Shown here piece after piece: positions 17,941 through 25,023 of a DNA stretch of 64,000 nt; position 1 is the stretch's first letter; each line of letters opens with the position of its first letter. The stretch is taken from the sequence record MT710307.1. One strand, given 5' to 3'. A program made the position numbers and the translations under genes. The notes under the pieces are model-generated. The model had not been told where the DNA came from, ran no database searches, and saw nothing but the letters and a program-made list of their open reading frames with translations.

Positions 17941-18369
17941 ATGAATACACTGTCTTTCGAAGCGGGTAAAGGGTTAAGCGTTAACGGGCATCTGGTACCG
18001 GACACCAACAACCACCATTTTGAAAAGCTCTACCGTCGTATCGGGGTAGGGCGTAAGGTCAACCTGAAAATCACCAACGAGATTGCCCTCAATGGCAACG
18101 TGGCGGCTTTAGGTCCGATGTATGGCTTCCGTCCAAGCCAAGACGCAGCTGCTGCCCTGTTGCAGCACGGTGAGTTTAGCAGCGGTGTGTACGCGTTCCG
18201 TTTACTCGGTTCGCTGCGTCGCGTGTCGAACAAACACGTTGGTCAGGGCATGACACCAACCGTTTTACAGAGCGGTGAGATTATTGTCCTCGTACATTCC
18301 AATCACGAATATAAGTCGGGTTTGGATTTCATGATTAGCTATTCCGAAGTGGAGAGTGCAGATGTCTGA
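17941..18369 (+). CDS. Hypothetical protein
   Basis: 142 aa after the terminator, with AGGGA RBS. Confidence 0.7.
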   Translation: MNTLSFEAGKGLSVNGHLVPDTNNHHFEKLYRRIGVGRKVNLKITNEIALNGNVAALGPMYGFRPSQDAAAALLQHGEFSSGVYAFRLLGSLRRVSNKHVGQGMTPTVLQSGEIIVLVHSNHEYKSGLDFMISYSEVESADV

Positions 18370-19246
18370 TAGAACTTACCCTGTCTTAAAGAACTTTGAA
18401 CGTGTCGATGTGTGGAACACCAATTCCGACATTTATCGTCACGGTAATGTGCATCAGCAGTCACTGAAAATGTATCGCCATCTTGGTGAGCTGTGTGAAG
18501 GTGTCCAGAAAATGAAACAGCTGGACGTGGCCTCCGCGATGGGTAAATTTGTGGTGGCGCTGGTCGGTGTGGCCTCCTTCGCAGGGGTCGACGCAGAGGA
18601 GCTGGATGGGCTTTACAGCTACGCAGGCAGAAAAGCTACTCCATGTACCCCAGCGCAAGCTGCGTGCAATCTGGTGCGTTCTACGACCTCTATGGTCAAC
18701 GATATCAACCAGTGGTTATCTCCGGCGGGTACAGAGATGGCCAGAGCGATTGCAACGTCCTCTATCTGCGAAGTTTTCTGTTTGCTCAAGCAGAACGCTT
18801 CCCTGAATGCGGTGGTGTTAGACCGCACGATTGAGAACGCCACGAACTGTCTTCTGAAAAAGACCGGTAAGATGGACGAGTTCGGCATCTTCCATCCCGA
18901 GGCAGTTGAGCCTACCCGCCTCGGCGGCGAAGTAACAGCGCGGGGTGAAGCGCTCTGGGCTAAACAGTTTATCCTCAACGGGTTGAAAGGACGGTTCGCC
19001 GAACTGACCGTTCGCTTTCAGTTTGAAGTCGTGGGCGACGACATCTCCGAGGTGATTGAGCGGGACATGAATGTCAAACTCAAGGAGCTGTTAGAGAAAC
19101 ATGTCATGCGGAAGCCTGAGTACCGCCATCTCATGAACGACCGCAAGCCCGCAATCGTCGCGGTGAAGAACCATGATCAACTTGAGGTTCTCCCTAACGA
19201 CGATCTCAAGGAACTGCTCAACGAATTAGAAAAGGTAACCGGCTGA
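18362..19246 (+). CDS. Degenerate MazG-like (all-alpha NTP-PPase fold) protein with C-terminal extension
   Basis: W.T...I...[13 protein letters not shown]...[13 protein letters not shown] and [25 protein letters not shown] follow the MazG-like pattern, but acidic metal ligands are replaced. Confidence 0.55.
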
Positions 19247-20307
19247 TGAAACAGTATTTGGAATTGATGCACGCTGTGTTGAACGAAGGTCACGAGAAAG
19301 CTGACCGTACCGGCACGGGTACCATCTCTATTTTCGGGTATCAGATGCGTTTTGACTTGCGCAAAGGGTTCCCGCTGGTCACCACCAAAAAGCTGCATCT
19401 GCGCTCTATCATTCATGAGCTGTTGTGGTTCCTGAACGGCGACACCAACATCCAGTATCTGAAAGATAACAACGTCAGTATCTGGGATGAGTGGGCGGAT
19501 GAAAACGGCGACCTTGGCCCTGTCTACGGTAAGCAGTGGCGTCGTTGGGAAGACGTTCGCTTGGTGCCGAAGAAAAACGCTGCGCTTATTCAGAAACTGG
19601 AAAGTCGTGGTTACACGAACTACGGTGAAGCAGACGACGGTTCGCAGATGTTCGATGCGCGCGTACTCTTTAAAGAGCACGACCAAATCTCCAAGATCAT
19701 CGACCAGTTGCGTAATGACCCCGACAACCGTCGCATCATCGTCAGTGCATGGAACGTAGGGGATTTGGACGACATGGCGTTAGCGCCGTGCCATTCCTTC
19801 TTCCAGTTCTACTCCCGCCCGATGATGGGCAAAGAGCTGGACACGTATTTGGCGGAGTACCTTAAAACCGATGCGCGTTTGGCAGCGAAACACGCCGAAC
19901 AGGTTGCCCTTTGTGAAGCTGACCCGCAAGGGGATCACGTTAGCTCGCACATGTTCTGCCTGACCAACGATATACCGACGCGTGTACTGTCCTGTCAGCT
20001 TTACCAGCGTAGTGCAGATGTCTTCCTCGGCGTCCCGTTCAACATCGCATCTTACGCGTTGCTGGTTCACATGGTGGCACAGCAGGTCAATATGGTGGCG
20101 GGTGATTTCGTCTGGACGGGTGGCGATACCCATCTGTATTCGAACCATCTGGAACAAGCCACGTTGCAACTTTCCCGTGTGCCGCATGACCTGCCCAAGC
20201 TCGTCATCAAACGTAAGCCCGATTCTATCTTCGACTATAAGTTCGAAGACTTTGAAATCGTCGGTTATGAATCGCATCCGGCGATTAAGGCCCCGGTTGC
20301 TATCTAA
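19246..20307 (+). CDS. thyA: Thymidylate synthase with two insertions
   Basis: [50 protein letters not shown] and the C-terminal [10 protein letters not shown] are all very close to enterobacterial ThyA. Confidence 0.97.
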
Positions 20308-20316
20308 GGAGCGTGT

Positions 20317-20817
20317 ATGTCTGACAACATACTGAAGTTTCCCGGTAAGCCTAATCCCAACCCTATCACCGTAACACCCCATGAACACCGCGCCCATTTC
20401 CCCATTCACAGCCGTGATGGGAAGGTGGGTTCGTTTACAGTACCGGTGGGTGATATGTATTGGTGGGCGGCAATCTACGAACAGGTTGCTGCGACTAATC
20501 CGTTTTTCGAAAACGTCTTTTACTTCTATTCCGAACCTTACGGTTGGCAGAATCAATCCTTTGCGAAGCGTAGAGCGTCGTGCGAATTGACGATTGACCG
20601 CCGAACCCTGATGGAAATATTGAAAGCGGTGGCTTATACGCACGTTCTGTCTTTTGATAGCCTTCTGAACGACGACGATTACCATCTTGTCCATGATAAC
20701 GCCATGATGGTGTTGGCTGACGATTTGGAAATCGATTATGCGATGGGGATATTCATGTCCCCGACAACGAACCCTGACCGGTTCATCATTAATTTCGTGG
20801 AATGCCATAATGACTGA
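20317..20817 (+). CDS. Hypothetical protein
   Basis: AAGGAG RBS, 166 aa. Confidence 0.75.
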   Translation: MSDNILKFPGKPNPNPITVTPHEHRAHFPIHSRDGKVGSFTVPVGDMYWWAAIYEQVAATNPFFENVFYFYSEPYGWQNQSFAKRRASCELTIDRRTLMEILKAVAYTHVLSFDSLLNDDDYHLVHDNAMMVLADDLEIDYAMGIFMSPTTNPDRFIINFVECHND

Positions 20818-21673
20818 CAAACTCAATAACCTGTATTTCTTCTCCGACCGTTTCTACACCATGCCGGGTGACAACTACTCCTTCGGTATTGTTGCAGCAA
20901 AAGACACGGCCGAAGCCAAACTGATGCTGGGTACCGAACTGGTCGATGGTCTGCCACTGGGCACCACGAACGCAACCGGCCAGATTCTGTGTGCGGAAGA
21001 AATCCGTCACATCGAACCGCGTGCCGACAGCGTAGCGAAAACCGTGGTTGCTGACCTGTGGAAACTGAACGATGGCGTGGATGTTTCCGAGCGTGTGAAA
21101 TACCTGCGCGAAACCATTTCGAAAATGCAGGGTATTGACTGTAGCAATCTGGAAGTGGACTTCACCCGTTGTCTGCGTATTCCGGGCGGTTGTACCAGCA
21201 CCGGCAGTGACCTGTGGCGCATCATGGTGAAACACCCAGACTTCCCGAACACCGTACCGATCATGCTGTCTGCGCAGGGCGACGGTTCAATCACCGGTAA
21301 CGATGATGTGAACTTCACCAAACTCGGTGAAACCGAAGAGTACACTTACCACGAAAACGTGGATCGTGTACTGACGCCTGAATGGCTCCTGCTGGACTTG
21401 CTGGAGCAGCACGGCCTGACCCCAGAAGACTGGTACGTGATTGCCGGTACGGCGCGCGCAGCAGCCTATAGCGCTACCCCGGTAGATGGCTGGGAAGAAG
21501 TCGCTGAAGTATACGGCCAGAACGAAAGCGCGCACGTTATCCGCTTCTGGCTGAACCCAGACTGGCAGAACCTGATTGTGGCAGCAGTGGCGAAAGTGGT
21601 TGAGTCCATGCCAAAAGAGCCGCTGCCAGAAAACCTCGCCGACGAACTGGCGGGTTCCGAATCTGCGGAATAA
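20810..21673 (+). CDS. Hypothetical acidic protein
   Basis: ATG 20810 overlaps the upstream gene end. Strong codon bias. Confidence 0.7.
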   Translation: MTDKLNNLYFFSDRFYTMPGDNYSFGIVAAKDTAEAKLMLGTELVDGLPLGTTNATGQILCAEEIRHIEPRADSVAKTVVADLWKLNDGVDVSERVKYLRETISKMQGIDCSNLEVDFTRCLRIPGGCTSTGSDLWRIMVKHPDFPNTVPIMLSAQGDGSITGNDDVNFTKLGETEEYTYHENVDRVLTPEWLLLDLLEQHGLTPEDWYVIAGTARAAAYSATPVDGWEEVAEVYGQNESAHVIRFWLNPDWQNLIVAAVAKVVESMPKEPLPENLADELAGSESAE

Positions 21674-21707
21674 TCCGCAGAATAACTTAACTGAAAAGGT
21701 GAACAAA

Positions 21708-22160
21708 GTGTCTACGACTCTAATCAATTACGATTTAGTAGTGCAAGAACTTTCCAAAGGCTTGATTGCCCTCGACAGCGAAACGGCGTTGCGTTGCAAT
21801 ATGCTACCCCATATCGCACTCAGTGAGTTCCGCACGATTCGTTACGGTGCCGGTCGCCAGAAAGGTGTAACCGAGTACATTTCGAAGTTAGCTGCGGAAC
21901 ACAATGGGCCGGTGTTGGTTCTGACGCATGCCGTGGCGCTACGGGACGAATTCATGTTTCGCGTCGAAGGTAACTTTCCGGGTAAAGACAACATCACTTC
22001 GTTATGTGGGTACTTCCCCGACAACTGGCGAGTTGAAAAGTTCAGTCTCGTTATTGTTGATGAAGCCGGTTTCTTCTTTAAGAAGTTTGGCTACGATAAA
22101 ATCTATCGCAGTCTGGCAACACAAACGACTGACGATGTTGTGATTCACCTGATTAACTGA
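21708..22160 (+). CDS. Small P-loop NTPase-like protein with degenerate Walker A
   Basis: AAGGTG RBS with GTG start, GAGRQKGVT (Walker A-like, no Lys) and LVIVDEA (Walker B). Confidence 0.55.
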   Translation: MSTTLINYDLVVQELSKGLIALDSETALRCNMLPHIALSEFRTIRYGAGRQKGVTEYISKLAAEHNGPVLVLTHAVALRDEFMFRVEGNFPGKDNITSLCGYFPDNWRVEKFSLVIVDEAGFFFKKFGYDKIYRSLATQTTDDVVIHLIN

Positions 22161-22168
22161 GGTTTGTA

Positions 22169-22333
22169 ATGTCCCAAGTAGAAAAAGAAGTCATCGCACA
22201 AGCAGATACCACTTCACTGGACGATTTGTTTGGTGGTGATATTCCGGGTGTGGATGAGAACGCGGTAGTTGAAGGCGGTGTCGATGCTGGCGCTGAAGAC
22301 GACAACTGCGCAGGCGGTGCCTGCAAAATTTAA
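22169..22333 (+). CDS. 54-aa acidic peptide ending in an NrdA C-terminal-tail-like CxxxxCKI motif
   Basis: Hand-translated: MSQVEKEVIAQADTTSLDDLFGGDIPGVDENAVVEGGVDAGAEDDNCAGGACKI*. GAGG RBS at 22159-22162 and a terminator right after. Confidence 0.85.
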   Translation: MSQVEKEVIAQADTTSLDDLFGGDIPGVDENAVVEGGVDAGAEDDNCAGGACKI

Positions 22334-22340
22334 CAAGAGC

Positions 22341-22374
22341 GGGTGTCCTTATGGACACCCCTATTTCATTTTTT
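22341..22374 (+). terminator. Intrinsic terminator
   Basis: GGGTGTCC-TTAT-GGACACCC followed by a T-rich tract. Confidence 0.75.
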
Positions 22375-22388
22375 AAGGACTATCAGAA

Positions 22389-23222
22389 ATGCAACAGACT
22401 TTTGAGTTACCGATTGAACACAAAGCCGTCATCCTGAACAGCGCCATCTTAGATTTCGTCATGCCTCAGTTGGCGGCGGCCGGTAAACGGATGTCTCGCA
22501 TTACGCGTCTGGCGATCAGCAGTGAAGGGCCACAGACGCTGGTTAACGGTTTTACCTTTGAAGGTGAACCGGCAGAATTCCACGCGATGCTGCGCTACCA
22601 CACCGGACTCGACTTCCACAAAGAGCCGGTCTACCATAACCGCATCGTTCCGCTGTACCGTGTGTCGCAGTGTGTGGCCAAAGTCATTGGCTGGTCAACT
22701 GACCGCGGTATTCTGGAAAACGGCCGTTGGGACTCACAGGGTACCAAGCTGTATGAAGAAGACGGTGAAGCCGCCACTGGCGTTGGTAAAAACAAAAAGC
22801 GCCTGATTATTGATGGTATCGGTGACGCACTGGTTGTACTCGTTAACGTACTGGAGCTGACCAGTATTGATGCCGCAGAAATTGCGCACATCTATCAGCT
22901 GGTACGTGACACCAAAACCGTGGTGGATAACCCGCACTACCATTTCCACAAAATGCGTAAGAACCTGACCGAAGTGGTCGATGTGGTTTACGAATGCGAA
23001 GCCATCGATTCGCCGAAGAAAGTGGAAATCGGTCGCTTAACGCACGACGAGCGTCAGCAGATGTTGGGCCATGCGCAGCAGGCAATCCATCATGCCAACC
23101 AACTGGCACGCCATTACGATTACTCGCTGGATGAGTGCTTCTCTCTGGCGTGGGATGAAATCAAAGACCGTAAAGGTTTCCTGAACGCTGACGGTGTGTT
23201 CATCAAAGAAGCCGACGCTTAA
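22389..23222 (+). CDS. MazG-like nucleotide pyrophosphohydrolase
   Basis: GWSTDRGIL...QGTKLYEEDGE...IDGIGDALVVL and the C-terminal LDECFSLAWDEIKDRKG..NADGVFIKEAD. Confidence 0.85.
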   Translation: MQQTFELPIEHKAVILNSAILDFVMPQLAAAGKRMSRITRLAISSEGPQTLVNGFTFEGEPAEFHAMLRYHTGLDFHKEPVYHNRIVPLYRVSQCVAKVIGWSTDRGILENGRWDSQGTKLYEEDGEAATGVGKNKKRLIIDGIGDALVVLVNVLELTSIDAAEIAHIYQLVRDTKTVVDNPHYHFHKMRKNLTEVVDVVYECEAIDSPKKVEIGRLTHDERQQMLGHAQQAIHHANQLARHYDYSLDECFSLAWDEIKDRKGFLNADGVFIKEADA

Positions 23223-23254
23223 TTCACGTCCACTAACAATGCAGGAGTAGGACA

Positions 23255-24109
23255 ATGGAATACCAATTATTTCTCATCACGAACGACTTTACCAAATCCT
23301 TTGTGGACGAGTCGTTTCATGCCACGGTAGTCGCGCCGACAGAGGCCGCTGCTCGTTGGATTGTTGCCCAGCAATGTACTGACCTTCCGATGAGCGAAGT
23401 GCAGGCTGCGGTGGCTTTTGCAGTGGGTAAGATTGACGCCCCTGCCGAGGGAATAATTTCCTTTGAGTTCGGGAAACGTAATCGCTTCCCAATGCGTAAC
23501 CTTGACGCCTACAAGTTGCGTGACGAGTTTATTGAGGTTGAGCTGCACGGTGGGATACAACCAACGCACGACATTCATCCCCCGGTGCCGGGTGCAGTGG
23601 TCACATGCTTTGCGAGCAAAGAGCATCCGCGTATCGTGCTGATCCGCAGCACCCTCAAAACCAGAACACCGACCCTCATTGAAAAGGTGGGGGTGACGAA
23701 TGAAGCCACGTCGGTTCAGCTTTACACCGTCCATTCGCCGTCGGCGTATACTGAGGTGGCAAAAGGCGAAGTCTTCACCACTGAGTACATCAACCTGTTT
23801 GGACGTGAAGATGTCCTGCTGTTCCGCTCGCTCATTATCCGTAACACCGAGCTGGCCTATCAGAACAAACGCACAGAAGAGTTATTGCAGCAACTGCAAT
23901 CGTTCTTCACCGAAGGGGGTGACCGTAACAGCATGGACGCGGGCGTCAGCTACTATCCGGGACAGAAGTTGTCGATTACTGACCCCAGTAAGTTGGTGTT
24001 GTGGGTCATGTCGTTACCGCAGGTCATCACCCTCGACCGGACGATTACGGAAGAGAGTCTCAAGCCGATTGCAGGCACTAACTGCCACACCCTGAACGCG
24101 GGAGAGTAA
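23255..24109 (+). CDS. Hypothetical protein
   Basis: AGGA RBS, 284 aa. Confidence 0.75.
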   Translation: MEYQLFLITNDFTKSFVDESFHATVVAPTEAAARWIVAQQCTDLPMSEVQAAVAFAVGKIDAPAEGIISFEFGKRNRFPMRNLDAYKLRDEFIEVELHGGIQPTHDIHPPVPGAVVTCFASKEHPRIVLIRSTLKTRTPTLIEKVGVTNEATSVQLYTVHSPSAYTEVAKGEVFTTEYINLFGREDVLLFRSLIIRNTELAYQNKRTEELLQQLQSFFTEGGDRNSMDAGVSYYPGQKLSITDPSKLVLWVMSLPQVITLDRTITEESLKPIAGTNCHTLNAGE

Positions 24110-24110
24110 T

Positions 24111-24611
24111 ATGTTTGATGTGGACATCGTCCCCCAAGGGGACGAGTTCGCAGTACAGATAAACGGCGTCACCATCTGTGTCTGCGACGAACAACGGGCT
24201 AACTTCTGGCGTTGCTGTACGGGCGCGGATAAAGTCTTCGTCAGCTGTGACGTCGGTGTGTCGTTTGGTGAAGAACCGCTGCGGTTGTGTAAGTTCCGTA
24301 TCACTGAAACGGAAATGCGCACCTTCCTCGGACAGGTAGTCTACACCTACGACCATCTCGACCATGAGAACCGTGTGGGTTGGGTAGAAATTGACCCGAC
24401 CATTATGCGGACGTTACGTCAGGGTGCTGAGGAGATTGTTGAGTCACAAAGCATGTGGCTTGATGAAGATGATGTGTATCCGAAAGGGGAACCGTTCATC
24501 CTTATCCATCCTGAACGCAACAGCCGTACGGGGGAAGCCTTTATTGAGCTGATGTTTATCGAGATGCCGGAGAACGACGATGTCGAAGAAAAAGAATCAG
24601 CTGACTTTTAA
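24111..24611 (+). CDS. Hypothetical acidic protein
   Basis: GGAG RBS, 166 aa. Confidence 0.7.
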   Translation: MFDVDIVPQGDEFAVQINGVTICVCDEQRANFWRCCTGADKVFVSCDVGVSFGEEPLRLCKFRITETEMRTFLGQVVYTYDHLDHENRVGWVEIDPTIMRTLRQGAEEIVESQSMWLDEDDVYPKGEPFILIHPERNSRTGEAFIELMFIEMPENDDVEEKESADF

Positions 24612-25023
24612 TGCTGACAGTCAGACCATCAGCGTAAACGGGAAGAACTGGGGTAACCTCGGTTTGGCAGCGTGGGTGCTGGAACGTCTGGCGAATCGCT
24701 CTACCCGTTTCGGGGGTCTCGACTTTGTCATTATCGACGAACCGCTCAAGTACGCACCGTGGCAGAACTTCCATGCCATCGAGATGTACAGTGCGATTCC
24801 GAACATGATAATCTCAAAGGTGCTGGCAGAGCAGAACTACCGCGGTGGCTTTACCAACCCGCATTGGGCACTGACCTCGAGTCAGAAGTACGGCATTGAA
24901 GTGCCGCTACTGAACAAAGTCCCGGCGGACATTGGCGAAGATGCGTTGGTGTTCTTCTTCTCCTACGACCACGCTGAACCAAACAGCGAGTTCCAGTGGA
25001 CGATGCTGCATCAGATGTGTTAA
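24580..25023 (+). CDS. Hypothetical protein
   Basis: GGAG RBS, 147 aa, ends at a terminator. Confidence 0.7.
   Translation: MSKKKNQLTFNADSQTISVNGKNWGNLGLAAWVLERLANRSTRFGGLDFVIIDEPLKYAPWQNFHAIEMYSAIPNMIISKVLAEQNYRGGFTNPHWALTSSQKYGIEVPLLNKVPADIGEDALVFFFSYDHAEPNSEFQWTMLHQMC

What the first reader, a model, noticed from the sequence alone, without database searches (positions are those of the whole stretch)
22169..22333. Free-standing mimic of the ribonucleotide reductase (NrdA) redox C-terminal tail
Seen: a 54-aa ORF below the ORF-track cutoff, with its own GAGG RBS and downstream terminator. It is highly acidic, Gly-rich and probably disordered, and ends EDDNCAGGACKI-stop. Established: class Ia RNR alpha ends in a flexible acidic tail with a Cys-x4-Cys pair (E. 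coli NrdA ...DDGCESGACKI). That pair shuttles electrons from thioredoxin/glutaredoxin to the active-site disulfide. No nrdA catalytic body lies upstream; the preceding gene is a P-loop fragment. The ORF sits between thyA and a MazG-like hydrolase. Inference: the phage expresses the RNR tail alone. It could be (a) a trans-acting shuttle that speeds host RNR re-reduction and dNTP supply, (b) a competitor or decoy for the RNR active site or Trx/Grx, or (c) the separated tail of a split phage nrdA encoded elsewhere. I do not know of a described stand-alone version.
Basis: partly seen in the sequence, partly recalled or inferred. Interest (0 to 1): 0.9.

Follow-up and report, generated by a model that had tools for sequence, protein, structure and literature searches.

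The report
Free-standing ribonucleotide reductase tail protein
A jumbo Salmonella phage with no ribonucleotide reductase (RNR) of its own encodes a 54-residue acidic protein that copies only the flexible, two-cysteine tail of the host enzyme. The same stand-alone tail forms a widespread, undescribed family in phages and bacteria, so part of the DNA-precursor machinery can probably be supplied as a separate molecule.

Summary
Window 22169-22333 (+) is a real, annotated 54-aa gene of Salmonella phage pSal-SNUABM-04. It has a GAGG ribosome-binding site and a terminator hairpin, and it is under strong purifying selection.

A profile of the protein found only class Ia RNR alpha chains in the PDB, all matched at their extreme C-terminus. 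It scores 17.5-26.7 bits on nine NrdA tails, against at most 9.1 bits for shuffled tails.

The phage genome has no NrdA body and no NrdB, so this is not a split phage nrdA.

The protein belongs to a family of at least 88 clusters of 38-104 aa. Both cysteines and the last five residues are essentially invariant. Members occur in SPN3US-like jumbo phages, other phages, and Neisseria, Kingella, Moraxella and Pasteurella chromosomes.

On three metagenomic contigs the module forms the C-terminus of a deoxyribonucleotidase encoded directly upstream of an nrdA that lacks its own cysteine tail. That is a natural case of the tail encoded apart from the enzyme.

The most likely role is a trans-acting thiol shuttle, or modulator, between thioredoxin/glutaredoxin and the host RNR active site. 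Whether it activates or inhibits is unresolved. Six full-text searches found no prior description.

The parts
22169..22333 (+). Gene for the 54-aa free-standing RNR-alpha-tail protein (stop codon included); annotated pSALSNUABM04_237
   Evidence: conserved in 71 phage records; purifying selection
22159..22162 (+). GAGG ribosome-binding site, 6 nt before the ATG, overlapping the stop codon of the upstream gene
   Evidence: read directly from the sequence; purine-rich stretches occupy the same place in relatives
22169..22264 (+). N-terminal half (residues 1-32): acidic and variable, with the phage-type motif Ile-Pro-Gly-x-Asp at residues 25-29. No similarity to NrdA or NrdB; possibly a docking element
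   Evidence: Ile25, Pro26, Gly27 and Asp29 are invariant in 6 diverse phage homologues; a profile of this half finds nothing in the PDB; only low-confidence helices predicted at 3-11 and 14-20
22265..22330 (+). Tail module (residues 33-54), homologous to the flexible C-terminal redox tail of class Ia NrdA. Cys47 is at 22307-22309 and Cys52 at 22322-22324, followed by Lys-Ile and the stop
   Evidence: PDB profile search hits only RNR alpha C-termini; 17.5-26.7 bits on nine NrdA tails against at most 9.1 for shuffles; column counts
22341..22378 (+). Intrinsic-terminator-like hairpin (22341-22360) plus a T-rich run
   Evidence: positionally conserved, with different stems, in Huxley, SPN3US, Asesino, pEa_SNUABM_30 and the E. 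coli replicon
21708..22160 (+). Upstream neighbour, 150 aa: a small P-loop / RecA-like alpha/beta domain of unknown function (phrog_2586). Syntenic with the peptide in Machina-, Seoul- and Erskinevirus. Neighbour only; not shown to belong to the system
   Evidence: AlphaFold2 pLDDT 87; only weak Foldseek matches (E>=2e-3, TM<=0.51) to helicase domain 1 and Rossmann methyltransferases
22389..23222 (+). Downstream neighbour, a MazG-like nucleotide pyrophosphohydrolase. Context gene; elsewhere a MazG-like domain occurs fused to the tail module (P0119)
   Evidence: phrog_7855 E 6e-121; weak Pfam MazG hit; fusion P0119
19246..20307 (+). Thymidylate synthase, showing that the neighbourhood deals with nucleotide metabolism
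   Evidence: Pfam PF00303 E 4e-116

Best explanation
The gene encodes a disordered, strongly acidic mini-protein whose last ~20 residues are a homologue of the flexible C-terminal tail of class Ia RNR alpha (NrdA). That tail carries the cysteine pair that takes electrons from thioredoxin or glutaredoxin and re-reduces the active-site disulfide after each turnover. The phage has no RNR, so the target must be the host's class Ia enzyme and its redoxins. I propose that the free tail works in trans. It is reduced by host Trx/Grx like the tethered tail, enters the oxidised active site of host NrdA and returns it to the dithiol state. This would add a second route through the re-reduction step and raise dNTP supply for replicating a 240-kb genome. 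The N-terminal half, with its own conserved motif, would act as a docking element in place of the missing covalent tether. Shown: homology to the tail, its position at the extreme C-terminus, invariance of both cysteines, absence of a phage class I RNR, the nucleotide-metabolism context, and a natural system in which the tail is encoded apart from a tail-less NrdA. Inferred: the redox exchange itself, its direction (activation), and the role of the N-terminal half.
For: (1) The family profile finds only class Ia RNR alpha C-termini in the PDB, 14 of 14 hits. One is the isolated 25-residue R1 tail peptide, 1qfn_B. (2) It scores 17.5-26.7 bits on nine tailed NrdA, always over the last 15-19 residues. 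The maximum for 900 shuffled tails is 9.1 bits, and the tail-less NrdA gives no match. (3) The 110 tailed NrdA among the 120 closest relatives of the L038 NrdA carry the same residues at the same positions as the free proteins: Cys-8, Gly-5, Ala-4, Cys-3 and Lys-2 in 110/110, against 88/88 in the free proteins. (4) Both cysteines are invariant, and 83 of 88 proteins have exactly two. This fits a requirement for complete dithiol/disulfide chemistry rather than mere binding. (5) The module is always at the extreme C-terminus, including in fusion proteins. (6) On three independent contigs (L038-L040) a deoxyribonucleotidase carrying the module at its C-terminus is encoded between DHFR and nrdA-nrdB. 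That NrdA stops right after the last conserved fold element and has no cysteine tail. (7) The phage has no NrdA body or NrdB and no annotated RNR, thioredoxin or glutaredoxin. (8) The gene lies in nucleotide-metabolism clusters in unrelated phages: thyA and MazG here; dNMP kinase and thyA in ~60-kb phages; and a MazG-like domain fused to the module in P0119. (9) It is under purifying selection and predicted to be disordered. [quoted passage not shown] From my own knowledge: 1QFN is the glutaredoxin-1 complex with the isolated tail peptide, so a redoxin can recognise the tail off the enzyme.
Against: No redox or binding data exist. Host NrdA already has its own tethered tail, which has a large local-concentration advantage, so a benefit from a free copy is not obvious. 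A free tail could equally compete for Trx/Grx or block the active site. In every locus with a free-standing copy (more than 40), no nrd gene lies within the 4-10 kb available, so genomic linkage to RNR rests on the three fusion contigs, which come from one study. The similarity is short, and E-values against the PDB are only 0.05-0.2. The N-terminal half matches neither NrdA nor NrdB. Phage-encoded redoxins and class II/III RNR were excluded only by the depositor's annotation and a Pfam check of the two radical-SAM genes.
Confidence: 0.5

Rival explanations
1. Decoy or inhibitor. The free tail competes with the tethered NrdA tail for thioredoxin/glutaredoxin, or occupies the NrdA active site. 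This would throttle host RNR, much as small disordered RNR regulators do in yeast.
For: The homology evidence is the same. A redoxin can bind the isolated tail peptide (1qfn_B). Solitary chromosomal copies in Neisseria, Kingella, Moraxella and Pasteurella, away from nrd genes, would suit a regulator. From my own knowledge, Sml1 inhibits yeast R1 by interfering with tail-dependent regeneration.
Against: The phage has no RNR yet must make much more DNA than the host chromosome can supply (inference), so shutting down host RNR looks counter-productive. Strict conservation of both cysteines and their spacing is more than a steric decoy needs. On L038-L040 the module is the only cysteine tail available to the adjacent NrdA, which argues that it is catalytically competent.
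Confidence: 0.2
2. Adaptor. The module is a docking tag that brings phage nucleotide-metabolism enzymes, or itself as a bridge, to host RNR or redoxins, forming a dNTP-synthesis complex. The redox chemistry would be secondary.
For: The module occurs fused to a deoxyribonucleotidase (P0120), to a MazG-like pyrophosphohydrolase (P0119) and, in one jumbo phage, to the homologue of window gene 20810-21670 (L046). It neighbours MazG, thyA and dNMP kinase genes. The N-terminal half has its own conserved motif.
Against: Most members are free-standing proteins of 40-60 aa with nothing to tether. Fusions could simply result from neighbouring genes merging. The N-terminal profile matches only generic acidic amphipathic helices in the PDB.
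Confidence: 0.12
3. Unrelated function with a convergent ending, such as a metal-binding peptide or a precursor of a modified peptide (RiPP).
For: The match to NrdA is short (15-20 residues) with marginal database E-values. The phage has two radical-SAM genes.
Against: The radical-SAM genes lie about 60 kb away and are not syntenic. Bacterial copies are solitary, with no maturase or transporter nearby. Identity with NrdA tails extends over seven invariant positions plus the acidic run and the exact C-terminal register. The fusion next to a tail-less nrdA is hard to explain by convergence.
Confidence: 0.08
4. Non-functional relic of a phage nrdA lost by deletion.
For: The gene lies in the nucleotide-metabolism cluster where an nrdAB operon could once have been.
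Against: dN/dS is at most 0.13 while synonymous sites are near saturation. The gene has its own start, ribosome-binding site and terminator. It is conserved across at least five jumbo-phage genera and in other phages and bacteria.
Confidence: 0.03
5. Detached tail of a split phage nrdA encoded elsewhere in this genome.
For: Such an arrangement exists on L038-L040.
Against: tblastn with three NrdA and two NrdB proteins against the full genome (L007-L010 plus the window) finds only this ORF, at E 0.03; every other hit has E above 0.3. No RNR is annotated.
Confidence: 0.01

Closest known systems
C-terminal redox tail of class Ia ribonucleotide reductase alpha (NrdA / R1)
   Same: It sits at the extreme C-terminus. 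It has two Cys separated by four residues, followed by Lys-Ile and the stop, and preceded by an acidic run. It is predicted to be disordered. The residues at the invariant positions are the same.
   Different: It is a separate 54-aa polypeptide with its own start, ribosome-binding site and terminator, and it has no catalytic barrel, ATP-cone or any other NrdA sequence. Its N-terminal half carries its own conserved motif that is absent from NrdA.
Isolated E. coli R1 C-terminal peptide bound to glutaredoxin-1 (PDB 1QFN)
   Same: A tail-only peptide is recognised by a redoxin. Chain 1qfn_B is one of the 14 PDB hits of the family profile.
   Different: The 1QFN peptide is a laboratory fragment of 25 residues. 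The phage protein is a natural gene product with an additional conserved N-terminal part.
Small disordered RNR regulators of fungi (Sml1, Spd1, Hug1, Dif1); named from my own knowledge
   Same: They are small, disordered proteins that act on the large RNR subunit. Sml1 interferes with tail-dependent regeneration of the active site.
   Different: No sequence relationship appeared in any search. Those proteins are not copies of the tail and lack the Cys pair at the C-terminus.
Split or fractured RNR genes in phages and metagenomes (genes in pieces, split inteins; PMC2677866, and Aeromonas phage Aeh1 nrdA from my own knowledge)
   Same: Parts of an RNR subunit are encoded by separate genes. L038-L040 show a tail encoded apart from its NrdA.
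   Different: Known splits cut the catalytic body and are rejoined or assembled with the rest. Here only the tail exists, and in this phage no body is encoded at all.
Thioredoxin, glutaredoxin and NrdH redoxins
   Same: The presumed role is as a diffusible dithiol carrier feeding RNR.
   Different: There is no thioredoxin fold, the spacing is Cx4C rather than CxxC, the protein is disordered, and there are no Pfam or NCBIfam hits.

Membership tests
Class Ia RNR alpha subunit (NrdA) as an enzyme | Catalytic alpha/beta barrel (Pfam Ribonuc_red_lgC / lgN) with active-site cysteines | tested here: not met
   No Pfam hit. tblastn with three NrdA queries aligns only the last 17-18 residues, or weakly the last ~50.
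Class Ia RNR alpha subunit (NrdA) as an enzyme | Partner NrdB encoded by the same genome | tested here: not met
   Two NrdB queries give no hit better than E 0.7 in the whole phage genome. None is annotated.
RNR alpha C-terminal redox tail (sequence element) | Located at the extreme C-terminus of the polypeptide | tested here: met
   The stop codon follows directly in the window and in 88 of 93 homologue clusters. The same holds in the fusion proteins P0119, P0120 and L046.
RNR alpha C-terminal redox tail (sequence element) | Two cysteines with the class Ia spacing (four residues between them), preceded by an acidic run | tested here: met
   Cys at -8 and -3 in 88/88 free proteins and in 110/110 tailed NrdA. 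Asp at -11 and -10 in 77 and 68 of the 88 free proteins.
RNR alpha C-terminal redox tail (sequence element) | Sequence similarity to authentic NrdA tails beyond what composition gives | tested here: met
   All 14 PDB hits are RNR alpha C-termini. Scores are 17.5-26.7 bits, against at most 9.1 for 900 shuffled tails.
RNR alpha C-terminal redox tail (sequence element) | Flexible or disordered | tested here: met
   AlphaFold2 gives pLDDT 51-63 and no secondary structure from residue 21 on, with pTM 0.20. This is a prediction only.
RNR alpha C-terminal redox tail (sequence element) | Thiol-disulfide exchange with Trx/Grx and with the NrdA active-site pair | not testable with these tools
   No biochemical data. 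Indirect support comes from the tail-less NrdA next to a module-bearing gene.
RiPP precursor peptide | Adjacent maturase, protease or transporter genes | tested here: not met
   The phage neighbours are thyA, unknown proteins and MazG. Bacterial copies are solitary among unrelated housekeeping genes.
Thioredoxin-fold redoxins | Thioredoxin fold with a CxxC active site | tested here: not met
   No Pfam or NCBIfam hit. The spacing is Cx4C and the model is disordered.
NrdB C-terminal tail mimic (considered for the N-terminal half) | Similarity to the alpha-binding C-terminus of NrdB | tested here: not met
   Profiles of the N-terminal halves (A4, A5) hit no RNR beta chain in the PDB. A4 hits only two unrelated acidic helical peptides at E 0.4-1.3, and A5 hits nothing.

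The most novel reading that the evidence does not exclude
Stand-alone RNR tails are a previously unrecognised class of diffusible mini-redoxins that service class Ia RNR in trans. RNR-less phages would use them to tune the host enzyme. Some bacteria would keep a chromosomal copy as an extra or regulatory electron route. Some NrdA lineages would have lost their own cysteine tail and depend on a separately encoded one.
Probability: 0.4. Interest if true: 0.85.

Novelty: new variant of a known kind. Interest (0 to 1): 0.8.

Why it matters
The C-terminal cysteine tail is regarded as an integral part of class I RNR. Its movement between the redoxin and the active site is hard to study because the tail is disordered and tethered. 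A natural, conserved, free-standing tail, together with natural NrdA proteins that lack the tail, would show that this step can be separated genetically. It would also give structural biologists a defined partner for trapping the re-reduction complex. It would reveal a new way for phages to act on host dNTP supply: by adding a 54-residue part to the host enzyme instead of bringing their own. It would also assign a function to a small-protein family in Neisseria, Kingella, Moraxella and Pasteurella that has no Pfam, NCBIfam or PHROG annotation.

Tried and rejected
1. Single-sequence search of the PDB with the 54-aa protein found nothing. Only the family profile was sensitive enough.

2. Pfam and NCBIfam have no family for the peptide. 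PHROGs has only unknown-function families.

3. DNA-level search of the tail-coding part against 5,426 E. coli genomes gave no match to host nrdA, so there is no sign of recent capture from the host. The single hit was a jumbo-phage-like replicon.

4. I tested whether the N-terminal acidic helix mimics the NrdB C-terminus. This is not supported.

5. I looked for nrdA/nrdB next to free-standing copies. None lies within the available flanks of more than 40 loci.

6. I looked for relatives of the fusion protein P0120 in IMG/VR and found none. The metagenome scan added only six loci.

7. A trans-encoded module was not found within +-10 kb of two other NrdA genes lacking the cysteine tail, L076 and L077.

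8. P0119 is not detectably similar to the window's MazG-like protein by BLASTP, although both match MazG-type PHROGs.

9. For the upstream 150-aa protein, the fold search gave only weak helicase-domain and methyltransferase matches, and nothing links it to RNR.

10. Six full-text literature searches found no description of a stand-alone NrdA tail. The motif-string search was swamped by a surname. No expression data for the SPN3US homologue were found.

11. Whether the other peptide-bearing phages (SPN3US, CR5, Asesino and others) also lack RNR was checked only within the flanks fetched, not genome-wide.

All comparisons rest on sequences returned by the tools.

Full report
**Identity of the window.** A 6-kb segment around the finding (window 19000-25000) is 100% identical to Salmonella phage pSal-SNUABM-04 (MT710307.1, 239,626 bp, genus Machinavirus, an SPN3US-like jumbo phage). 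From the match coordinates, window base 1 corresponds to record base 175,627.

**The observation.**
- The ORF is at 22169-22333 on the + strand, has 54 codons, and ends with the letters quoted in the finding.
- It is already annotated as hypothetical protein pSALSNUABM04_237.
- A GAGG at 22159-22162 overlaps the stop codon of the upstream gene and lies 6 nt before the ATG.
- An 8-bp hairpin with 6 G-C pairs at 22341-22360 is followed by a T-rich run. A hairpin plus T-run occupies the same position, with different stem sequences, in Huxley, SPN3US, Asesino, pEa_SNUABM_30 and an E. coli replicon. It is absent in CR5, where the next gene overlaps.
- The protein has 13 acidic and 2 basic residues and 8 glycines.
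- AlphaFold2 with 26 aligned homologues gives pLDDT 61 and pTM 0.20, with no secondary structure after residue 20.

**It is a real, selected gene.**
- tblastn finds it in 71 phage records from Erwinia, Salmonella, Cronobacter, Escherichia, Proteus and Vibrio phages.
- Six homologues from five genera share an invariant Ile-Pro-Gly-x-Asp, a Gly-Val-Asp, and the whole C-terminal end.
- Over the last 30 codons, synonymous differences are near saturation among the distant relatives (pS 0.66-0.97; 0.33 against the near-identical Huxley). Non-synonymous differences stay at pN 0.01-0.27, and dN/dS is at most 0.13 wherever it can be computed.

**Is it really like the RNR tail?** I tested this without supplying any RNR sequence.
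- A profile of the six phage homologues was searched against all 177,635 distinct PDB sequences at E<=10. It returned 14 sequences. All are class Ia RNR alpha chains or an R1 tail peptide, and each is matched at its last 12-15 residues. They include a 773-residue alpha chain (7mdi_A), the E. coli R1 entries, and the 25-residue R1 tail peptide 1qfn_B.
- E-values are modest (0.05-0.2) because the match is short, but the specificity is complete.
- A scan of one genome per bacterial species then returned nine full-length NrdA genes (755-762 aa) ending in the same way.
- A profile of 26 family members scores 17.5-26.7 bits on these nine, always on the last 15-19 residues. Nine hundred composition-matched shuffles of the same tails reach at most 9.1 bits.
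- The free proteins and NrdA tails share the same residues at the same distance from the stop codon. Cys-8, Gly-5, Ala-4, Cys-3 and Lys-2 occur in 88/88 free proteins and in 110/110 tailed NrdA. Ile-1 occurs in 83/88 and 109/110.
- The module of about 21 residues is as long as the stretch of NrdA that follows the last conserved fold element.

**No RNR in the phage.**
- The depositor's annotation of all 280 features lists thymidylate synthase, dihydrofolate reductase, thymidylate kinase, two MazG-like proteins and an NT5C-like protein. It lists no RNR, thioredoxin or glutaredoxin.
- tblastn with three NrdA and two NrdB proteins, taken from the loci returned, was run against the entire genome. 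The peptide ORF was the best hit (76% over 17 residues, E 0.03). Nothing else was better than E 0.3.
- The two annotated radical-SAM proteins give only generic radical-SAM and 4Fe-4S hits.

**A large family, not a jumbo-phage curiosity.**
- A word-indexed search of 5.8 billion proteins returned 93 clusters of 38-104 aa. Of these, 88 end exactly at the Cys-x4-Cys-Lys-Ile/Leu stop, and 83 have exactly two cysteines. Median length is 51 aa and median net charge is -11.
- An exhaustive profile search of 1.84 billion representatives found 74 clusters at E<=0.001. Almost all are 39-120 aa and none has NrdA length.
- There are two subtypes. The phage type has the Ile-Pro-Gly-Leu-Asp-Pro motif. The second type has an acidic amphipathic N-terminus.
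- The second type occurs in chromosomes of Neisseria, Kingella, Moraxella cuniculi and Pasteurella testudinis. There it is a solitary gene among unrelated housekeeping genes, not near nrd genes and not in prophages.
- The second type also occurs in other phages: ~72-kb contigs with a T7-type RNA polymerase, a contig with an SU10-type portal, and ~60-kb contigs.
- In the ~60-kb phages the gene is followed directly by a dNMP kinase and, a little further on, a thymidylate synthase.
- No Pfam or NCBIfam family covers it, and the PHROG families are of unknown function.

**Fusions and a natural tail-less NrdA.** Three longer proteins carry the module at their C-terminus.
- P0119 is a MazG-like pyrophosphohydrolase (phrog_671, E 2e-30) plus the module.
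- P0120 is a 5'-3' deoxyribonucleotidase (phrog_2643, E 3e-15) plus the module.
- In one 237-kb jumbo phage (L046), the homologue of window gene 20810-21670 runs in frame into the module.
- P0120 lies on three independent contigs between DHFR and an intein-containing class Ia nrdA followed by nrdB.
- That NrdA stops a few residues after the last conserved fold element and has no cysteine tail, while nrdB starts 46 nt later. In this system the only cysteine tail is encoded by the neighbouring gene.
- Among the 120 closest NrdA relatives, 110 carry the canonical tail and 3 carry a variant with a shorter Cys spacing. Seven have no cysteine tail: P0175 itself, P0176-P0180 and P0182.
- P0176 sits on a bacterial contig (nrdA-nrdB-ferredoxin-type I-C CRISPR) whose run accession is from the same series as the fusion contigs, so it may represent the host lineage.
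- No module lies within 10 kb of P0176 or P0182, so whether those enzymes also rely on a trans tail is open.

**Mechanism.**
- A redoxin can recognise the tail as an isolated peptide. 1qfn_B is among the hits, and from my own knowledge 1QFN is its glutaredoxin-1 complex.
- Four observations favour a redox-competent, trans-acting tail: the invariance of both cysteines, the strict C-terminal position, the nucleotide-metabolism context, and the tail-less NrdA with a module-bearing neighbour.
- In this RNR-less phage, such a tail would add an electron route to host NrdA and raise dNTP supply (confidence 0.5).
- The main rival is a decoy that competes for redoxins or blocks the active site (0.2). 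It fits the solitary bacterial copies but not the needs of an RNR-less lytic phage.
- An adaptor role is suggested by the fusions (0.12).
- Convergence (0.08), a dead relic (0.03) and a split phage nrdA (0.01) are disfavoured or refuted.
- The idea that the N-terminal half mimics the NrdB tail was tested and is not supported.

**Neighbours.** The upstream 150-aa protein (21708-22160) is confined to this phage group. It folds confidently (pLDDT 87) into a small alpha/beta domain. Only weak matches link it to helicase RecA-like domain 1 and Rossmann methyltransferases. It is replaced by non-homologous genes in CR5 and pEa_SNUABM_30.

**Novelty.** Six full-text searches, together with the RNR-family papers read, gave no description of a stand-alone NrdA tail. 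I rate the finding a new variant of a known kind: a known functional element in a new genetic form, with a family-wide distribution and one natural trans arrangement.

**Limits.**
- There are no expression, binding or redox data.
- The similarity is short.
- RNR absence was tested genome-wide only for this phage.
- Redoxins and class II/III RNR were excluded by annotation only.

Noticed in passing
L075 (NZ_CP173450.1, 188237-194277); peptide homologue at L075 2896-3039: A circular 221,873-bp 'plasmid' of a clinical E. coli urine isolate carries thyA, a 47-aa homologue of the tail protein and a hairpin terminator in the same order as the jumbo phages. It looks like a jumbo-phage genome assembled as a plasmid.
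   Followed up: partly
L076 932-3208 (P0176; also P0177-P0180) and L077 10001-12244 (P0182): These class Ia NrdA proteins have tails with no cysteines. One is on a bacterial contig with nrdB, a ferredoxin and a type I-C CRISPR system. The other is on a 390-kb contig with few Pfam hits. How they are re-reduced is unknown, and no trans module lies within 10 kb.
   Followed up: partly
L046 9059-10123: In one 236.9-kb jumbo phage the homologue of window gene 20810-21670 (phrog_10453) runs in frame into the tail module as a 355-aa ORF, and the P-loop-like gene appears to be missing. Internal ATG codons just before the module could still give a separate product.
   Followed up: partly
P0099 (89 aa, metagenomic): An N-terminal fragment of an IscU/NifU-like protein (Pfam NifU_N, E 1e-18) is joined to a complete tail module. 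It is probably an assembly or gene-call chimera. It is still curious, because IscU-like domains are reported in class II RNR C-termini (PMC9669993).
   Followed up: no
window 19246-20307: The thymidylate synthase is 353 aa, against a Pfam profile of 266 positions, and it matches the profile in two stretches. It therefore carries sizeable insertions.
   Followed up: no
window 18356-19246 and 22389-23222: Two divergent MazG-like pyrophosphohydrolase genes flank the thyA-to-peptide block. Each matches the other's PHROG family weakly.
   Followed up: no
MT710307.1 136088-138225 (L009 36088-38225, minus strand): Two adjacent radical-SAM proteins (448 and 264 aa) give only generic Radical_SAM and Fer4_12 hits. 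A QueC-like gene lies elsewhere in the genome, which may point to a deazaguanine-type DNA modification.
   Followed up: partly
Salmonella phages SPFM5-SPFM15 (P0042, P0085, P0089): In several SPFM records the peptide region appears as scrambled or permuted small ORFs, or is unannotated. This looks like a record-start or assembly artefact at this locus.
   Followed up: no
one search hit list (two Vibrio phage records, not displayed): Two Vibrio cholerae phage records match the peptide in tblastn but fell below the 60 rows shown. They could be free-standing copies or phage NrdA tails.
   Followed up: no
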